Positions 11,412-25,664 of a stretch of 32,000 nt of DNA are shown here, in pieces. The DNA lies in the NCBI RefSeq assembly GCF_000400465.1, contig NW_008806284.1:210001-242000 (forward strand), written 5' to 3'. The first letter of the stretch is position 1; the number at the start of each line of letters is the position of its first letter. The notes under the pieces were generated by a model. The model did no database searches and was not told where the DNA came from. It saw only the letters and a program-made list of their open reading frames with translations. The stretch comes from Wallemia ichthyophaga EXF-994. Taxonomy: Eukaryota > Fungi > Basidiomycota. Made by a program: the position numbers and the translations under genes.

Positions 11412-12515
11412 TTAATGCTTAACAAGACAAAGGACATCCTCATCTTCTAATATATGGTCTAATCCGACCTTTTGACCTCTTGGATGTTTAGATGACTTGC
11501 CCCAAACAACGGCGTACTTGAGTTGCTTTGCGATTTCCTTGTGAATTGCATGTGCAAAGTGCTCAACAGTACATCTACCCTTTCTCAAAACAACTGGTGC
11601 CGTATAGTCTGGTGCTCTACCTTTGGGTCTTGTGTAAACTCTAACGAGCTGCAATCTCTGCCACATAATATCAATCAATTCATCAACGTTTAACCATTGT
11701 GACGATGAGATTGGAACAGAGTTTGGAATTTGATAGAGAAGATCCAATTCTTCAATTGAAATTGCATCAATCTTGTTTAAACAGTAGATGCAAGGGATGT
11801 ATACTCGGTTACCTTCAACAACATCAATCAGCTGGTCAACAGAGATATCCTCCCTAATCATAACATCGGCATTAGGTATTTTGTACTCTGACAAAACAGC
11901 CTTGATCTCTTCAGGTTCAATCTTTGTGAGTGGTACAGTGTTTGTGATAGCTATACCACCTTTTTCCTTCTTCTTTACTGAAATGTTTGGTGGTGATTGA
12001 TTTAGTCTAATACCGAAACCTTCCAATTCCCTTTCAATGACGCCCTTATCGTTTAATGGCTTCAATACGTCAAGTACAATGAAGATCAAGTTGCAAGTTC
12101 TTGAAACCGCAATGACTTGTCTACCTCTACCCTTACCATCTTTGGCACCTTCAATGATACCCGGCAAATCCAAAACTTGAATAGGTGCACCAAAAACATT
12201 CATTGTACCGGGAACAGTTGTAAGAGTAGTGAACTCGTAAGCAGCTGTCTCAGAGTGTGTGCCAGTTAATTTGGACATTAAAGTTGATTTACCAACTGAA
12301 GGGAAACCAATGAAACCGACTGAAGCTAAACCAGTCTTTGCAACATCGAAACCAACTCCAGGGCCACCACCACCAGAGGAAGAAGGAGTGAGAAGTTCCT
12401 TCTTGTATTTACTGAGCTTAGCTTTTAGCTGACCCAAATGGTAATTTGTGTTTTTATTCTTTTGAGTTCTAGCCATCTCATCCTCGATATCCTTAATCCT
12501 TTGTACCGTACTCAT
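11412..12515 (-). CDS. RBG1: Developmentally regulated GTP-binding protein (DRG1/Rbg1)
   Basis: 367 aa with [39 protein letters not shown] and a C-terminal TGS domain. Confidence 0.95.
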
Positions 12516-20775: not shown

Positions 20776-20863
20776 ATTTTTTATCTCAAGATGGTTCGGG
20801 TTAATGACGCGACGTCGTACCCATCCCCATCTCGTTGATATAAACGTCGAGATAGAAAAATTG

Positions 20864-22125
20864 ATGAAAACTGTTTCAACGGCTCCACTGGCTGGCTACA
20901 ACCTCGCTTATTCCCCTTTTCATAAATCTAGATTGGCTGTAGCATGCGCAGCCAATTACGGTGAGTGATAAGACGCACGCAATCGCCGGCAATTATAGCT
21001 TTATAGGCCTCGTTGGAAATGGCAGGCTTAGAGAGTATAGCTACGATCTACACGGCGATCTTTCTCCCCACTCATCGTGAGCCGTTTCTCTGGTATCGGA
21101 TACTTTTAATTGCCGAGACAGTTTCGACACTCAAGACGGTCTATTCGATTTGGCGTGGTCTGAACTCCATGAGAACCAGATCGTGACTGCAACTGGCGAT
21201 GGCAGCGTGCGGCTATTCGATACGCAGATTCCTGTGGGTGGTTCTATGTCCACTCAGCCGCACACACTCATCCACCGCGCAGAAATTCCCAATTAGGGCG
21301 TGGCATGAGCATTCTAGGGAGGTTTTCGGCGTCGACTGGTCACCAACAGACAAGACGCAGTTTGCGACGTACGTCATTGAGCTGATATCATCCATATCAC
21401 TCACAGCTAACGTCATTCCAGTGCTTCTTGGGACGGCACTGTTAAAATAGTGAGGAGACTCCACTCGCTCTCTCTTAGTTCACCACTCACTGCCACCAGT
21501 GGACACCCGATAACACCCACTCACTGCTCACACTTCCTGCGCACGATGGATGCGTCTACTCTGCCATATACAGCCCCCATCAGCCATACTGTCTAGCCAC
21601 CTGCGGATCAGACGGCAAGCTTCATGTATGGGATCTGAGAACACCTCAACGCCCAGCGACGTCACTGGCTGCCTCACCAACAGAGCTGCTATCGCTCGAT
21701 TGGAACAAGTATATCCAAGGCACGCTAGCCACTGGCAGCGTCGACAAGAGTATCAAAGTGTGGGATATACGGCAAGCGAAATGTCTCAATAACCTCCATG
21801 GACACGATTTCGCTATTAGGAGGGTGCAATTCTCGCCCCATGTACCCAATCTCATTGCCAGCGCATCTTATGACATGAGCGCAAGAGTGTAATTACCTGC
21901 CTCGCCGTTTGATCCACTCAATTAACGTGTTTTAGGTGGGACACTAGCGTTAACGCGTGCATTCATATCCATGATGCTCACACCGAGTTCGTCACAGGGG
22001 TCGCCTGGTCTCTATTTGATCCCTTGGTGCTGACTACTTGTGGATGGGACTACAAGGTGCACCTGCTCAGCCTCAAGGACCTGAATAGGCCGAACAACAT
22101 GAGGAACATCAGCAACAAGAGGTGA
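20864..22125 (+). CDS. PEX7: Peroxisomal PTS2 receptor Pex7 (WD40), multi-exon
   Basis: GYNLAYSPF, NYGLVGNGRL, FDTQDGLFDLAWSELHENQ, EHSREVFGVDW, DWNKY, SASYDMSARVW and HTEFVTGVAWSLF across GT-AG introns. Confidence 0.9.
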
Positions 22126-22182: not shown

Positions 22183-22959
22183 CTACATGTGATGCCTCGA
22201 TGATATAATTCCCATCGTAGGCTTAGCGTCCTGTCCGACGACTTGAGCATTTCCGTCAAAGACAGGTTTCGCTGGGTAAAGAAGCAACGATCTGCTGCTC
22301 AGCGGCCTCGTCGCGTAGGCCAAGATGCCCTTTGCTATGTGATCCGTCGAACGCTTTGCCTGTGTGAGTGTGAGTGTTAGTGTGATTGTGAGTGTGAGGA
22401 TAACAATCCAATGACGTACGCTGTACCAATACATTAGCGGTATATCGGCATTATACGCCATCAACCATCTTTTCGCCTCTACAGGATTCATCTGATGCTG
22501 GAGATGCAAATCGCCTGTGCGCATGTCAGCGACGCGTACATACACCCCAACACACCACGCACTCTTCGACAAGACGACGTACACGAGATTCCTGGCAATC
22601 AAGTATTGCGGTATATTCTTCATTTGCGTCGTAAAGTCTTCCATATGCTCCAAGCAGCTCACAACTATCACGAATAACTTGTGGTGTGGATGCTCGAAGT
22701 AGTGCTGATTAGAAATTGGGTCGCTGAGTTGGCTGCATCTTGTGAGCTCTGATTTCACATCTGTCTCCCTCATCACCCTCACATTCTCAGCCTCTGCTTA
22801 TCCCCCGCTAAATCTGCCACCCTCTTAGCAAGCTCTATCTTCCCAGAGAGTGATGATCCCGTTATCTGGATTACGCGTTAGATTTGATGGGCTGTGTTAA
22901 TATTTAATCACCATCAATTTGCAGTTCGGTAGCTGCTCCGCTTTTGTCACGTCCGCCAT
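22183..22959 (-). CDS. Orphan small-GTPase-fold protein (pseudo-GTPase, CENP-M-like candidate), 5 exons, 192 aa
   Basis: Exons 22959-22912, 22865-22783, 22738-22563, 22514-22420, 22359-22183 with 46/44/48/60-bp GT-AG introns. Degenerate G1 (GSSLSGKI), G4 (VVLSKSDL) and G5 (YSAK). Confidence 0.6.
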
Positions 22960-23124
22960 ATCGTTGAGAGTAATTAACGCGTTAGCTTGCCTATAAGTTG
23001 CATACAAAAATTATACACGCTTGAACATCTATCTATTGCTCCCATAATACATTTATTAAATCCCTTCAATGTCTATATGCGCTGCGTAGACTTAACTCGA
23101 AACTATTAATAAACATTCCTAGTC

Positions 23125-25664
23125 CTAAATCTCACTCAGACTAGCTTTGATTGCCTCTTCTAGCTGCGCCTCGAAATTCTGATCCACGTTTTCGGCTACC
23201 TGTGAGTAGCTCGGAGGTTCGGGATTCTCTTCCTCTATCGCCTCTTCTTGAGGTGCGACTGGCGCATACTCACTCCTCTTGCCCTCCTTCTTGGTCAGGT
23301 TGTTCGTATCACTATCGCCTTCTAGATTTATAGCATCTTCAATGTGCTGCTTTGAGGATCCTTCGATTGGCTCATAGGGAAAGTCACCCTCATACTGCTT
23401 TTCGAGATCCTCGCTTTTCTTTATTTCATCCAATATCGCTTCCATTTCGCTTTCTTCTCGCATCTTCTTTTGATTCTCTTCCTCTTCTTGGCTGATCATC
23501 ATAATGTCTGTCGCGGGATTAGTGCGATGGAACGTAATGTGAGTAACTCACACTCTAAGGTCTCCGATTCATCTAGTCCTAAATTCTCCAAGCGGCCAAG
23601 AGTCTTCATCATATTCTGCTTTCTATCCGCTTCACTCTCGGAAACATCGTCGGTTTCGTCTTGCATCACAAGTGACTCTCTTATCTCATCCCGCACATCT
23701 GACGAGTCTGTCAATGGTTAGTCTTTTGGTGATACTCGAGAAGCAACAGCTACAGTCACGGCAATACTCACACTGATTCTTCTGCGCAACTCCCTTATTC
23801 GAGCCTCTCCATCCTTTACCTCTAGTTTTAAAATCTTTTATACCCCCAGCTTTCCATGCAATTACTTTGTTGCCGATAGCAGCGACGACAGCAAATTCAT
23901 CCGCTACTATTCCGCTGACAGCAAACGCGTTCTCGTCTTCCGTCGATGCCTCATTTGTGGCCAGATACCGAGAGAGATGACGAGTCGATGATGTTTGATT
24001 GAATGATCTTATGGCATCACCGGTGAGTGGATCGTGCGCAATGAGCACTCCATCTGCAGCACCAGTCAGTAGAAGTAGAGGCGTGAGAGAGATGGTGGTT
24101 ATCTTTGAGTGGTGTCCGCCAAATATTCTCAACGGCTCTATCACCTGATCCGACCTCGCATCCCAATCCCATACACACGTCCTTCCGCTAGAGTCACCAG
24201 CTACGACTGCCCTTCTATGTTTTAATATCTGATCTTTTGTGTTAAATGAGGAGCCAATGTTGAGTGCATCAGAGAAATTGTTGGTGGAAGACGCACTTCT
24301 ACTCAATATCGGAGTTGAAAGTGGCGAGCACTTGCTGAGATCGTTGTTCAAATAGAAAGATGTGAGTTCGGATATTGGACCAAGCCCAAAGATTCTCTTC
24401 TTTTTAGTCTCAATGTCATGCCTCTCGAAGAAGGTCTCTGGCTTGCGATATATCAGAACGCTCACGTCGTTAGGACCTTGAGTGTCTAGTAGAAGTTTTG
24501 AGATTGGTAAGTATTTAGTGAAGCTTCCAAGAGAAGTATAAGCTACACGGTGTTCTTCTATTGTGTCTCTGGGGTTTTCTTCACTGATACATGCCTCAAT
24601 TGGCATATTACTCCATACTCTGACTGTTCCACTCTCATATCCAGCAGCGATAGAACAACTCGTGCTATCGTAAGCTACTTGTGTTACTGAATCTACGTGC
24701 GCCAACTCCTCTCCTTTGGAGTTGAGTAGCTTTTTGACGTCTGAGCTCCATATACAACGCAGCTCAGGCTCATTCGACCACAACTTAACGACGCCATCCA
24801 TGCTGCCGCTGACGAAAGAGGGCGCAGCCCAAGCGCTCTTTGAGAGAGTCGTTGATGGATGAGAAAGACAAGTGACAGGTCCATAGTGAAAATCACGGCT
24901 AATGTTTTGATGTGTTGCTAATCCGCTGCCTCGCACACCCCACGCAGATGCAGCTCCAGAGCCGTGCTGCAAAGCACTTTTAGCGATCTGGGTGAAACCG
25001 ACAAAACCAGAAGCAAAGCCCCAAATGACTCTGCCATCACTGGACAGCTCTACAGTAGAGGCATCGTTGGGGGCCATTCCTGGTGCAAGAATGTAGCCTT
25101 TGGCTAGCTTACCACTGAAAGGCTCCGATCTACTCAAGCAGGCGTGCATGAGGGATACGGAGATGAGTCTTCGCGGGGTGAGTTCCGGGTTTGTAATGGT
25201 GGACAAATCGAGAGATATCTGGTGTATAGTAGCGACTCTGGGGTTGTGAGTGATAAGCGGGGCCTTCGATTTCTTCCAGCGACGGATGTAGATGGACCGC
25301 CTAACGAATTCCTCTTTCCATGAGCTGAATCTGCCCGAGATTCTCGAAGCGATGATAGAAGTGAACTTTGAGTTCTCCTCTGAAGGTTGTATGCCTAGAA
25401 AAGAGAAGGCAAAGGCACGGCGCCAAGCAGCGTCATCGGTAGCAGTGTGATGGAGGGACTTGTTCGTAAGAGAAACAGCGATAAGGGAGCCAGGATCGAG
25501 ATAGGTGAGGATATGGAGGACAAGATCGTGTGGGAGATGGAACAGGAGAGAAGGGAGATGTGTGTCGTCGTCCTCGTCGTCGGTGGCTGATTGGGGGATT
25601 AAGTCATAGCCAGACAGAGCCAGCCGAACTCACAATTAGAATGAGAATAGAGGTTATTTGACAT
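23125..25664 (-). CDS. F-box/WD40 protein with C-terminal UIM-like helices, 4 exons
   Basis: ATG at 25664, intron 25633-25587. F-box LFHLPHDLVLHILTYLDPGSLIAVS; WD repeats (SGSMDGVVKLW, AGDSSGRTCVWDW, GHHSKITT, TGAADG); C-terminal LDESETLEYIMMISQEE and FEAQLEEAIKASL. Confidence 0.8.

What the first reader, a model, noticed from the sequence alone, without database searches (positions are those of the whole stretch)
22183..22959. Hidden five-exon gene encodes a switch-less Rab-like pseudo-GTPase resembling kinetochore CENP-M
Seen: splicing four canonical introns yields MADVTKAEQLPNCKLMITGSSLSGKIELAKRVADLAGDKQRLRICSQLSDPISNQHYFEHPHHKLFVIVVSCLEHMEDFTTQMKNIPQYLIARNLVYVVLSKSDLHLQHQMNPVEAKRWLMAYNADIPLMYWYSAKRSTDHIAKGILAYATRPL... 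The G4-like SKSD and G5-like SAK motifs form only across predicted splice junctions, which supports the model. G1 is GxxxxGK followed by I instead of S/T. Switch I and G3 (DxxG) are missing, and there is no C-terminal prenylation cysteine. Established: CENP-M is a ~180-aa Rab-related pseudo-GTPase lacking switch regions, part of CENP-H/I/K/M, with no recognised ortholog in budding or fission yeast. Inference: a fungal CENP-M retaining more GTPase motifs than the human protein, or a new pseudo-GTPase family.
Basis: partly seen in the sequence, partly recalled or inferred. Interest (0 to 1): 0.75.

Follow-up and report, generated by a model that had tools for sequence, protein, structure and literature searches.

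The report
Wallemia CENP-M kinetochore pseudo-GTPase gene
This is a real five-exon gene of the salt-loving fungus Wallemia ichthyophaga that encodes a very diverged copy of the kinetochore protein CENP-M; it is already in GenBank and UniProt already calls it CENP-M, so it is a correct call, not a hidden or new gene.

Summary
The gene is real. It lies on the minus strand at 22959..22183, with five exons and four GT-AG introns. One acceptor needs a 6-nt correction, which gives 190 aa instead of 192. The window is W. ichthyophaga EXF-994 scaffold KE007234.1:210001-242000. The 190-aa product is exactly EOR00562.1 / XP_009268663.1 (J056_000760). UniProt R9AEF8 already carries the automatic name "Centromere protein M", so the gene is not hidden.

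A syntenic ortholog in a second Wallemia-like genome keeps all four intron positions (dN/dS 0.09).

Sequence alone shows only a diverged Ras/Rab-like domain:
- hhalign 78% against Ras/Rab and 49% against CENP-M.
- No Pfam PF11111 hit.
- CENP-M HMM scores of 9-19 bits, against 35-208 bits for true members.

The deciding evidence is gene structure. All four introns fall in the same alignment column and phase (0,2,1,0) as the introns of accepted CENP-M genes of Mucor and Spizellomyces. They also match four of the five introns of Nematostella, Salpingoeca and guinea pig.

Supporting points:
- Hydrophobic residues align with both human CENP-I-binding residues (L94, L163).
- Wallemia keeps CENP-I and CENP-N.

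Verdict: CENP-M ortholog (about 0.88). It has the usual non-vertebrate CENP-M motifs. It is already named in databases but absent from the papers I could read. Interest is low to moderate.

The parts
22912..22959 (-). Exon 1 (codons 1-16, MADVTKAEQLPNCKLM). It includes the N-terminal QLP motif at 22927-22935.
   Evidence: QLP aligns with the K/x-L-P motif of CENP-M.
22866..22911 (-). Intron 1: 46 nt, GTGATT...CTAAC...CAG, phase 0, between M16 and I17 (KLM|ITG).
   Evidence: Same column and phase as intron 1 of six CENP-M genes.
22783..22865 (-). Exon 2 (codons 17-44, partial). It carries the degenerate P-loop GSSLSGK-I (22839-22859) and helix 1, ELAKRVADLAG.
   Evidence: Conserved as GSSLSGK-V in the ortholog.
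22733..22782 (-). Intron 2: 50 nt, GTGAGG...CTCAC...TGCAG, phase 2 inside codon I44.
   Evidence: The TGCAG acceptor is conserved in L006. It yields exactly EOR00562.1. Same column and phase as CENP-M intron 2.
22563..22732 (-). Exon 3 (codons 44-101, partial). It holds the strand-loop-strand QLSDPISNQHYFEHPHHKLFVIVVS and the YLIAR motif (22591-22605), which is equivalent to human FFLGK with L94. It ends in S-K of SKSD.
   Evidence: 72% identical exon-3 ORF P0122 in a relative.
22515..22562 (-). Intron 3: 48 nt, GTGCGT...CTGAC...CAG, phase 1 inside codon S101 of SKSD. It is in frame and has no stop.
   Evidence: The ortholog's intron is 46 nt and has a stop. Same column and phase as the CENP-M intron in Mucor (VTK|M|D), Spizellomyces, Nematostella, Salpingoeca and guinea pig.
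22420..22514 (-). Exon 4 (codons 101-132): DLHLQHQMNPVEAKRWLMAYNADIPLMYWYS.
   Evidence: 29 of 31 residues are identical in the ortholog.
22360..22419 (-). Intron 4: 60 nt, GTACGT...CTAAC...CAG, phase 0 between S132 and A133. It is CA-rich, in frame and has no stop.
   Evidence: Same column and phase as the last CENP-M intron.
22183..22359 (-). Exon 5 (codons 133-190 plus stop). It holds the last helix, the SRSLLLY motif (22276-22296, equivalent to the human VSALNLL with L163) and a conserved C-terminal tail ending MGIISSRHHM.

Best explanation
The gene encodes the Wallemia ichthyophaga ortholog of CENP-M, the small-GTPase-like subunit of the CENP-H/I/K/M module of the inner kinetochore (CCAN).

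Shown here:
- The gene is a conserved, purifying-selected five-exon gene.
- Its product has the element order of a Ras/Rab G domain, but the stretch between helix 1 and strand 4 is about 25 residues, against about 52 in Rab. Switch I and strand 2 are therefore gone and switch II is shortened.
- The P-loop keeps GxxxxGK but has I/V where Mg-binding Ser/Thr should be.
- G3 is DPIS (no Gly) and G4 is SKSD.
- There is no prenylation cysteine.
- Its four introns sit at the same codon positions and phases as the introns of accepted CENP-M genes.

Inferred:
- Like human CENP-M, it does not act as a nucleotide switch. It serves as a structural wedge that binds and stabilises CENP-I (W. ichthyophaga R9AB10) and ties it to CENP-H/K and CENP-L/N.
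- It does so through a hydrophobic surface that includes I89 (aligned with human L94) and L157 (aligned with human L163).
- Whether it still binds a nucleotide without hydrolysing it is open.
For: - **Gene model.** define the model. It is identical to EOR00562.1 / XP_009268663.1 / UniProt R9AEF8, and UniRef names that entry 'Centromere protein M'. UniRef gives the same automatic name to the accepted CENP-Ms of Spizellomyces, Capsaspora, Nematostella and Salpingoeca, whose GenBank names are also 'hypothetical'.
- **Selection.** dN/dS is 0.09. Exons are 74% identical and introns 45-57%. Within the species there are 2 exonic and 5 non-coding SNPs.
- **Intron positions.** Wallemia introns have phases 0,2,1,0 at KLM|ITG, RLR|I|QLS, LSK|S|D and WYS|AKR. 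Mucor and Spizellomyces CENP-M have 0,2,1,0 at the equivalent NVL|LIG, FYK|I|FT, VTK|M|D and NFL|NEL. Capsaspora has three of them. Nematostella, Salpingoeca and guinea pig have 0,2,2,1,0.
- **Alignment test.** In MAFFT L-INS-i and G-INS-i alignments, made without intron information, all four fall in identical columns. In E-INS-i, three are identical and one is 2 columns off.
- **Chance estimate.** The chance of 4 of 4 matching 5 fixed sites is about 3e-9 with 450 sites and about 8e-6 with 64 protosplice sites.
- **Specificity of the test.** Among Rab genes, conserved intron positions are subfamily-specific and have been used to place diverged orphans (PMC3504004).
- **Full-length colinear hhalign match** to 17 CENP-Ms: E 1.8e-4, 137 columns.
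- **CENP-I-binding residues.** YLIAR aligns with F-F-L94-G-K and SRSLLL with S-A-L163-N-L-L. Human L94A+L163E abolishes CENP-I binding (PMC4080450).
- **Partners.** W. ichthyophaga has CENP-I (R9AB10) and CENP-N (R9AGB9) and lacks bridgin (PMC7794384 Suppl. Data).
- **Motif retention.** Non-vertebrate CENP-Ms also keep GxxGxGK followed by a non-Ser/Thr residue, and T/S-K-x-D.
Against: - Pfam PF11111 hits all 17 reference CENP-Ms but neither Wallemia protein.
- A CENP-M HMM scores the two Wallemia proteins at 8.6 and 18.9 bits. That is no better than RAB1A (17.1). True CENP-Ms score 35-208 bits in leave-one-out tests.
- hhalign is slightly better against a Ras/Rab profile (78%, E 1.9e-5) than against CENP-M (49%).
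- The best matches among solved-structure sequences are Rab33B (E 0.02), not CENP-M.
- The CENP-M hallmarks LPLP and RPRID are not kept.
- The only AlphaFold model that resembles CENP-M is low-confidence (pLDDT 54) and was built on a CENP-M alignment.
- I could not fetch Rab genes of Wallemia as an intron-position control.
- No transcript, localisation or binding data were available.
Confidence: 0.88

Rival explanations
1. A lineage-specific, degenerate Rab-like pseudo-GTPase of Wallemia that arose from a Rab paralog and has nothing to do with the kinetochore.
For: - Profile and HMM scores against Ras/Rab are as good as or better than against CENP-M.
- There is no Pfam CENP-M hit.
- No homolog outside Wallemia was detected in 1.84 billion representative proteins.
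Against: - All four introns match CENP-M positions and phases, and intron positions are subfamily-specific among Rabs.
- The deletion pattern is shared with CENP-M: the helix 1 to strand 4 stretch is about 25 aa in both.
- Hydrophobic residues align with both human CENP-I-binding residues (I89 with L94, L157 with L163), and N-terminal LP and helix-1 LA motifs are shared with CENP-M.
- UniProt's signature-based name is CENP-M.
Confidence: 0.07
2. A still functional nucleotide-binding small GTPase or NTPase with an unusual P-loop, working as a switch in some other pathway.
For: GxxxxGK and SKSD are both conserved between the two Wallemia lineages. Lys and Asp are the key phosphate and guanine contacts.
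Against: - There is no Ser/Thr after GK in either ortholog.
- There is no switch I or strand 2.
- There is no DxxG glycine.
- There is no lipid-anchor cysteine.
- SAK is not conserved.
- No Ras, Roc or Arf Pfam match was found.
Confidence: 0.03
3. Not a real protein-coding gene: a chance ORF chain or a mis-modelled piece of the neighbouring F-box/WD gene, as in the 990-aa fused models of other strains.
For: Other strain annotations fuse it to pof10. Introns 3 and 4 are in frame and stop-free.
Against: - dN/dS is 0.09 and the codon-position pattern is that of a coding sequence.
- All splice sites and intron positions are conserved in L006, where intron 3 carries a stop.
- It has its own ATG and stop.
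- Its gene structure matches CENP-M genes.
Confidence: 0.02

Closest known systems
Human CENP-M (PDB 4P0T/4WAU; chain M of CCAN structures 7QOO, 7PKN, 7XHO)
   Same: - About 180-190 aa, a single Ras-like domain without switch I and strand 2.
- The same spacing between helix 1 and strand 4.
- No lipid anchor.
- Hydrophobic residues at the positions aligned with L94 and L163.
- Four of its five introns are at the same positions and phases.
   Different: - There is no detectable pairwise or mammal-profile similarity.
- Wallemia keeps GxxxxGK and SKSD, which mammals lost.
- It lacks LPLP and RPRID.
- It has a longer conserved C-terminal tail (residues about 160-190).
- It lacks the third ancestral intron.
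CENP-M of early-diverging fungi (Mucor circinelloides S2J2Y9, Spizellomyces punctatus A0A0L0HVP7; van Hooff et al. 2017 set)
   Same: - The same four-intron gene structure (0,2,1,0).
- A P-loop GxxxxGK followed by a non-Ser/Thr residue.
- An S/T-K-x-D remnant at G4 (TKMD in Mucor, SKSK in Conidiobolus).
- A Y/F-L-x-x-K/R motif before strand 5 and an S-x-L-L motif after the last helix.
   Different: - These fungal proteins match Pfam PF11111 and score 70-101 bits with a leave-one-out CENP-M HMM. The Wallemia proteins score 9-19 bits with the full 17-sequence HMM and get no Pfam hit.
- Wallemia is in Dikarya, where the papers I read report no CENP-M.
Rab GTPases (closest solved sequences: Rab33B, Rab30)
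   Same: The best sequence-level matches: hhalign 78% over 122 columns at 27% identity, and Rab33B E 0.02. The match covers P-loop, strand 4, helix 3, strand 5-G4, helix 4 and strand 6-G5.
   Different: - A 19-residue gap at switch I and strand 2, and a 7-residue gap in switch II.
- No P-loop Ser/Thr.
- No DxxG.
- No C-terminal cysteines.
- Intron positions match CENP-M. They do not match the H-RAS exon junctions as I recall them (37/38, 97/98, 150/151).

Membership tests
CENP-M (Pfam PF11111 / InterPro IPR020987) | Match to the curated family model PF11111 | tested here: not met
   No hit at E<=10 for either Wallemia protein. All 17 reference CENP-Ms hit.
CENP-M (Pfam PF11111 / InterPro IPR020987) | Profile similarity to CENP-M clearly above that to other small GTPases | tested here: inconclusive
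   hhalign gives 49% (E 1.8e-4, 137 columns) against CENP-M and 78% against Ras/Rab. HMM scores are 8.6/18.9 bits against 10.2/12.2 bits.
CENP-M (Pfam PF11111 / InterPro IPR020987) | Family-specific conserved intron positions and phases | tested here: met
   4 of 4 introns fall in the same column and phase as in Mucor, Spizellomyces, Nematostella, Salpingoeca and guinea pig, and 3 match in Capsaspora. No Rab-gene control could be fetched. The literature says such positions are subfamily-specific.
CENP-M (Pfam PF11111 / InterPro IPR020987) | Ras-like domain lacking switch I and strand 2, with a shortened switch II and no lipid anchor | tested here: met
   Gaps of 19 and 7 residues against the Ras/Rab profile, the same total as CENP-M against Ras/Rab. 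The secondary-structure order in both AF2 runs agrees. There is no C-terminal Cys.
CENP-M (Pfam PF11111 / InterPro IPR020987) | Hydrophobic residues at the CENP-I-binding positions (human L94, L163) | tested here: met
   I89 and L157 align with them in three alignments. This depends on the alignment. The function of the human residues is from PMC4080450.
CENP-M (Pfam PF11111 / InterPro IPR020987) | Partner CENP-I (and CENP-H/K, L/N) present in the same genome | tested here: met
   From the literature only. PMC7794384 Suppl. Data 1 lists W. ichthyophaga CENP-I R9AB10 and CENP-N R9AGB9. No CENP-H is listed, and the CENP-K sheet is cut off in the stored copy.
CENP-M (Pfam PF11111 / InterPro IPR020987) | Fold closest to solved CENP-M | tested here: inconclusive
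   Foldseek top hits are 7qoo_M and 4wau_A (TM 0.52-0.63). The model has pLDDT 54 and was built on a CENP-M alignment. The single-sequence model gave nothing.
CENP-M (Pfam PF11111 / InterPro IPR020987) | Binds CENP-I within HIKM and sits at centromeres throughout the cell cycle | not testable with these tools
   Needs pull-down, co-folding and imaging.
Ras-superfamily small GTPase (active switch) | G1 GxxxxGK[S/T] | tested here: not met
   GSSLSGK-I, and GSSLSGK-V in the ortholog.
Ras-superfamily small GTPase (active switch) | Switch I threonine (G2) and G3 DxxG | tested here: not met
   The switch I segment is deleted. G3 is DPIS or DSIS.
Ras-superfamily small GTPase (active switch) | G4 N/TKxD and G5 SAK | tested here: inconclusive
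   SKSD is conserved. SAK is present in W. ichthyophaga but is SAQ in the ortholog.
Ras-superfamily small GTPase (active switch) | Detectable homology to the G domain | tested here: met
   hhalign 78%, E 1.9e-5, 122 columns. PDB profile hit to Rab33B at E 0.023. No Pfam Ras hit.

The most novel reading that the evidence does not exclude
This would be the first CENP-M recognised in Dikarya. CENP-M would then have survived into the basidiomycete ancestor together with the rest of the CCAN, and been lost many times afterwards. Other CCAN-retaining Dikarya (Ustilago, Rhodotorula, Neurospora, fission yeast) may hide equally diverged CENP-Ms that a Wallemia-seeded profile plus the intron signature could find. 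Because GxxxxGK and SKSD are conserved, the Wallemia protein might also still bind a nucleotide. That would make it an intermediate between a GTPase and the fully dead vertebrate CENP-M.
Probability: 0.3. Interest if true: 0.5.

Novelty: already known. Interest (0 to 1): 0.27.

Why it matters
Reviews state that CENP-M was lost in fungi, or cannot be found in S. pombe and N. crassa (PMC9252888; PMC9235857). The van Hooff 2017 ortholog set holds no Dikarya member. Wallemia is the earliest-branching Agaricomycotina lineage and still has CCAN subunits.

A CENP-M there fits the picture of stepwise CCAN loss in Basidiomycota. It also gives a very diverged seed sequence for looking again in other Dikarya.

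The case also shows that conserved intron positions can settle orthology where profile methods cannot separate a pseudo-GTPase from its Rab relatives.

The gene and its name are already in GenBank and UniProt, so this is confirmation, not discovery.

Tried and rejected
- I used the unspliced ORF P0001 for the representative search. After the exact look-up I used the database entry P0126 for folding.
- **Word-indexed homolog searches.** Searches with the protein and with the two-ortholog profile returned only the species' own read-through ORF.
- **Search with human CENP-M.** It listed only mammals, which were useless as a profile. hhalign against them gave 0.5% and the HMM scored at shuffle level.
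- **Representative search.** It found only an exon-3 ORF of a relative, plus fish NLR-like repeat proteins whose 11-fold repeat inflates the score. I rejected those as spurious.
- **Single-sequence AlphaFold model.** pLDDT was 45 and the Foldseek matches were meaningless.
- **More Wallemia lineages.** A cluster look-up found none.
- **MluI cell-cycle boxes.** ACGCGT is enriched in the window, with three copies in or beside the gene. None is conserved in the ortholog's locus, so I make no regulatory claim.
- **CENP-M sheet of Sridhar et al. 2021.** It is cut off in the stored copy. I could not see whether they already list R9AEF8. A full-text search for the accessions found no paper.
- **RecA/Rad51-paralog and P-loop kinase readings.** I considered these for the Walker-A-like motif. 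I dropped them because the match to the G domain is colinear from the P-loop to G5.
Full report
**1. What is in the sequence**

The feature lies on the minus strand. An ATG at 22959 opens a five-exon reading frame that ends with the stop at 22183.

The four introns are short (46, 50, 48 and 60 nt). They start with GTGATT, GTGAGG, GTGCGT and GTACGT, carry CTAAC/CTCAC/CTGAC branch sites and end in AG.

The TGCAG six bases further on, which makes 22733 the last intron base, is the one conserved in the ortholog. It lies about 10 nt from the branch A instead of 3-4 nt.

Introns 3 and 4 are multiples of three and free of stops. Prokaryote-style ORF callers therefore report a 196-199 aa read-through product.

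**2. Where the window comes from, and whether the gene is hidden**

An intronless neighbour, the DRG GTPase at 11412-12515, is encoded identically on NCBI scaffold KE007234.1 of assembly GCA_000400465.1. The coordinates show that the window is positions 210001-242000 of that scaffold.

That record has a called gene with a 190-aa product at this place. An exact look-up shows that my corrected 190-aa protein is EOR00562.1 / XP_009268663.1, 'hypothetical protein J056_000760 [Wallemia ichthyophaga EXF-994]'. It is UniProt R9AEF8, which UniRef names 'Centromere protein M'.

So the gene is annotated and is not hidden. Annotations of other W. ichthyophaga strains fuse it with the upstream F-box/WD 'pof10' gene into proteins of 979-990 aa.

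**3. Is it a real, constrained gene?**

An exhaustive HMMER search with the unspliced ORF found one informative hit, an 83-aa exon-3 ORF (P0122, 72% identical). Its contig (L006, Logan SRR25399871) is syntenic, with the kinase, the F-box/WD gene and the acidic protein in the same order before this gene.

The ortholog has 191 aa, is 73-74% identical, and has introns at the same four positions (47, 47, 46 and 46 nt).

- CDS identity is 74%, with codon positions at 81/89/53%.
- Introns are 45-57% identical.
- dN is 0.16 and dS is 1.83, so dN/dS is 0.09.

In the ortholog, intron 3 contains a stop, so the introns are real.

A second W. ichthyophaga isolate differs at 7 sites in 810 bp. Only 2 of them are exonic, one of them synonymous.

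GSSLSGK(I/V) and LSKSDL are conserved. The 'SAK' is SSAQ in the ortholog.

**4. What sequence searches say**

Pfam finds nothing.

Against the sequences of solved structures, the best matches are Rab33B, Rab30 and kappaB-Ras. With the two-ortholog profile the best E-value is 0.02. These align strand 4, helix 3, strand 5-G4, helix 4 and strand 6-G5.

For reference sets I used two alignments:
- **CENP-M.** The 21 CENP-M orthologs published by van Hooff et al. 2017 (PMC5579357, supplementary CenpM.fa). I aligned 17 of them (A3).
- **Ras/Rab.** The human CENP-M sequence was verified against PDB entries.

hhalign results:

| Comparison | Probability | E-value | Columns |
|---|---|---|---|
| Wallemia pair vs CENP-M | 49% | 1.8e-4 | 137, colinear over the whole domain |
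| Wallemia pair vs Ras/Rab | 78% | 1.9e-5 | 122, 27% identity |
| CENP-M vs Ras/Rab | 93% | 2.4e-7 | 144 |

The Wallemia-versus-Ras/Rab alignment has gaps of 19 residues at switch I and strand 2 and 7 residues in switch II.

A CENP-M HMM scores the Wallemia proteins at 8.6 and 18.9 bits. That is above 2000 shuffles (maximum 7.5) but no better than RAB1A (17.1). True CENP-Ms score 35-208 bits in leave-one-out tests, and the fungal ones 70-101 bits. Pfam PF11111 hits all 17 reference sequences.

Conclusion from sequence alone: this is a diverged member of the small-GTPase superfamily. Assignment to CENP-M is neither shown nor excluded.

**5. Structure prediction**

Without an alignment the model is poor (pLDDT 45, pTM 0.44) and the Foldseek matches are meaningless.

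With an 11-row alignment made of CENP-M family members, the model reaches pLDDT 54 and pTM 0.51. The element order is strand-helix-strand-strand-helix-strand-helix-strand-helix. Foldseek then puts human CENP-M first:
- 7qoo_M: E 1.5e-4, TM 0.52/0.55.
- 4wau_A: TM 0.53/0.63.
- These come ahead of flavodoxin-like folds and Rab5 (TM about 0.45).

Because the alignment presupposes the answer and confidence is low, I count this only as 'not contradictory'.

**6. The deciding evidence: gene structure**

I fetched the genomic loci of six accepted CENP-M genes. I mapped their introns by requiring exact translation with GT/GC-AG introns.

| Species | Intron phases |
|---|---|
| Nematostella, Salpingoeca, guinea pig | 0, 2, 2, 1, 0 |
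| Mucor, Spizellomyces | 0, 2, 1, 0 |
| Capsaspora | 0, 2, 0 |
| Wallemia | 0, 2, 1, 0 |

The sequence contexts correspond:

| Intron | Wallemia | CENP-M genes |
|---|---|---|
| 1 | KLM\|ITG | NVL\|LIG, AIL\|IAG, TIL\|LVG |
| 2 | RLR\|I\|QLS | FYK\|I\|FT, DLE\|I\|RF, AIQ\|I\|RK |
| 3 | LSK\|S\|D | VTK\|M\|D, GFF\|G\|D |
| 4 | WYS\|AKR | NFL\|NEL, DAE\|NQQ |

In MAFFT L-INS-i and G-INS-i alignments, computed without intron information, all four Wallemia introns occupy exactly the columns and phases of the CENP-M introns. In E-INS-i, three do and one is two columns off.

The chance that four introns all hit five fixed sites is about 3e-9 if every nucleotide is a possible site. It is about 8e-6 with 64 protosplice sites.

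Gallegos et al. 2012 showed that conserved intron positions among Rab genes are subfamily-specific. They used 3-of-4 matches to classify diverged orphan Rabs (PMC3504004). From memory, the H-RAS coding junctions (37/38, 97/98, 150/151) do not coincide with these positions.

I could not fetch Wallemia Rab genes as a direct control. That remains the main caveat.

**7. Family-specific motifs and partners**

Outside the generic G-domain elements, the Wallemia proteins share several features with CENP-M:
- An N-terminal x-L-P before strand 1.
- 'LA' in helix 1.
- A Y/F-L-I-A-R motif aligned with the F-F-L94-G-K of CENP-M.
- An S-R-S-L-L-L motif after the last helix, aligned with V-S-A-L163-N-L-L.

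Human L94A+L163E abolishes binding to CENP-H/I/K and kinetochore localisation (PMC4080450).

The stretch between helix 1 and strand 4 is about 25 residues in both, against about 52 in Rab.

Non-vertebrate CENP-Ms keep GxxGxGK followed by R/H/K (rarely S/T), and T/S-K-x-D. The 'extra' GTPase motifs are therefore the family norm outside vertebrates.

Sridhar et al. 2021 list CENP-I (R9AB10) and CENP-N (R9AGB9) for W. ichthyophaga, and no bridgin. CENP-H is not listed, and the CENP-K and CENP-M sheets are cut off in the stored copy.

UniRef gives the automatic name 'Centromere protein M' to the accepted CENP-Ms of Spizellomyces, Capsaspora, Nematostella and Salpingoeca, whose GenBank names are 'hypothetical'. 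I infer that R9AEF8 got its name from the same signature-based rule. The signature is probably not Pfam, since Pfam fails here.

**8. How it most likely works**

Shown:
- A conserved 190-aa Ras-like protein without switch I.
- No P-loop Ser/Thr, no G3 glycine and no lipid anchor.
- The gene structure of CENP-M.

Inferred from the human structures and mutants (PMC4080450; PMC9235857):
- It stabilises CENP-I.
- It does not cycle between nucleotide states.

The conserved GxxxxGK and SKSD leave room for nucleotide binding without hydrolysis. That is untested.

**9. Novelty and verdict**

The gene model and the name are in public databases, so I rate the finding as already known.

The papers I could search say CENP-M is absent from fungi or from Dikarya models. 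The published ortholog set has no Dikarya member. No paper mentions the accession.

The Dikarya angle and the intron-based proof therefore have some value for kinetochore evolution. Confidence that this is the CENP-M ortholog is about 0.88. Interest is 0.27.

Noticed in passing
window 22515-22562 and 22360-22419: Introns 3 and 4 are 48 and 60 nt, in frame and free of stops. ORF callers therefore produce 191-199 aa read-through 'proteins' (P0001, P0152-P0154). Retaining these introns would insert 16 and 20 residues exactly in the G4 and G5 loops. In the ortholog the introns are 46 nt each, and intron 3 has a stop.
   Followed up: yes
window 22183-25206 (this gene plus the upstream gene): Annotations of about ten other W. 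ichthyophaga strains merge this gene with the upstream F-box/WD 'pof10' gene into proteins of 979-990 aa. The EXF-994 record keeps them apart as 190 aa and 794 aa. The fused models look like annotation errors.
   Followed up: partly
window 22977-22982, 22873-22878, 22532-22537 (and 8 other sites): ACGCGT (MluI cell-cycle box) occurs 11 times in the window, against 3.9 expected. Three copies lie in or just upstream of this gene, one of them 18 nt before the ATG. None occurs in the orthologous locus L006, so it is probably not a conserved regulatory feature.
   Followed up: partly
window about 20804-22125 (+) versus 22183 (-): A 343-aa WD40-repeat gene on the plus strand converges on this gene. 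The two stop codons are only 57 bp apart, so the 3' UTRs must overlap or be very short.
   Followed up: no
window 22360-22400: There is a CA-rich imperfect repeat (CACACTCACA...) inside intron 4. The ortholog's intron has no such repeat.
   Followed up: no
proteins P0123-P0125 (not in the window): Large fish NLR-like proteins reached E 1e-11 to 3e-5 against exon 3. They did so through 5-11 copies of a repeated unit (FLLDLCSHVKNYESQTGRSFLPALQPVYQ). This is a repeat-inflated chance match, not homology.
   Followed up: partly
literature, W. ichthyophaga genome outside the window: Sridhar et al. 2021 list CENP-I and CENP-N but no CENP-H for either Wallemia species. Given how diverged CENP-M is here, a small coiled-coil CENP-H or CENP-K may simply be too diverged or unannotated.
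   Followed up: no
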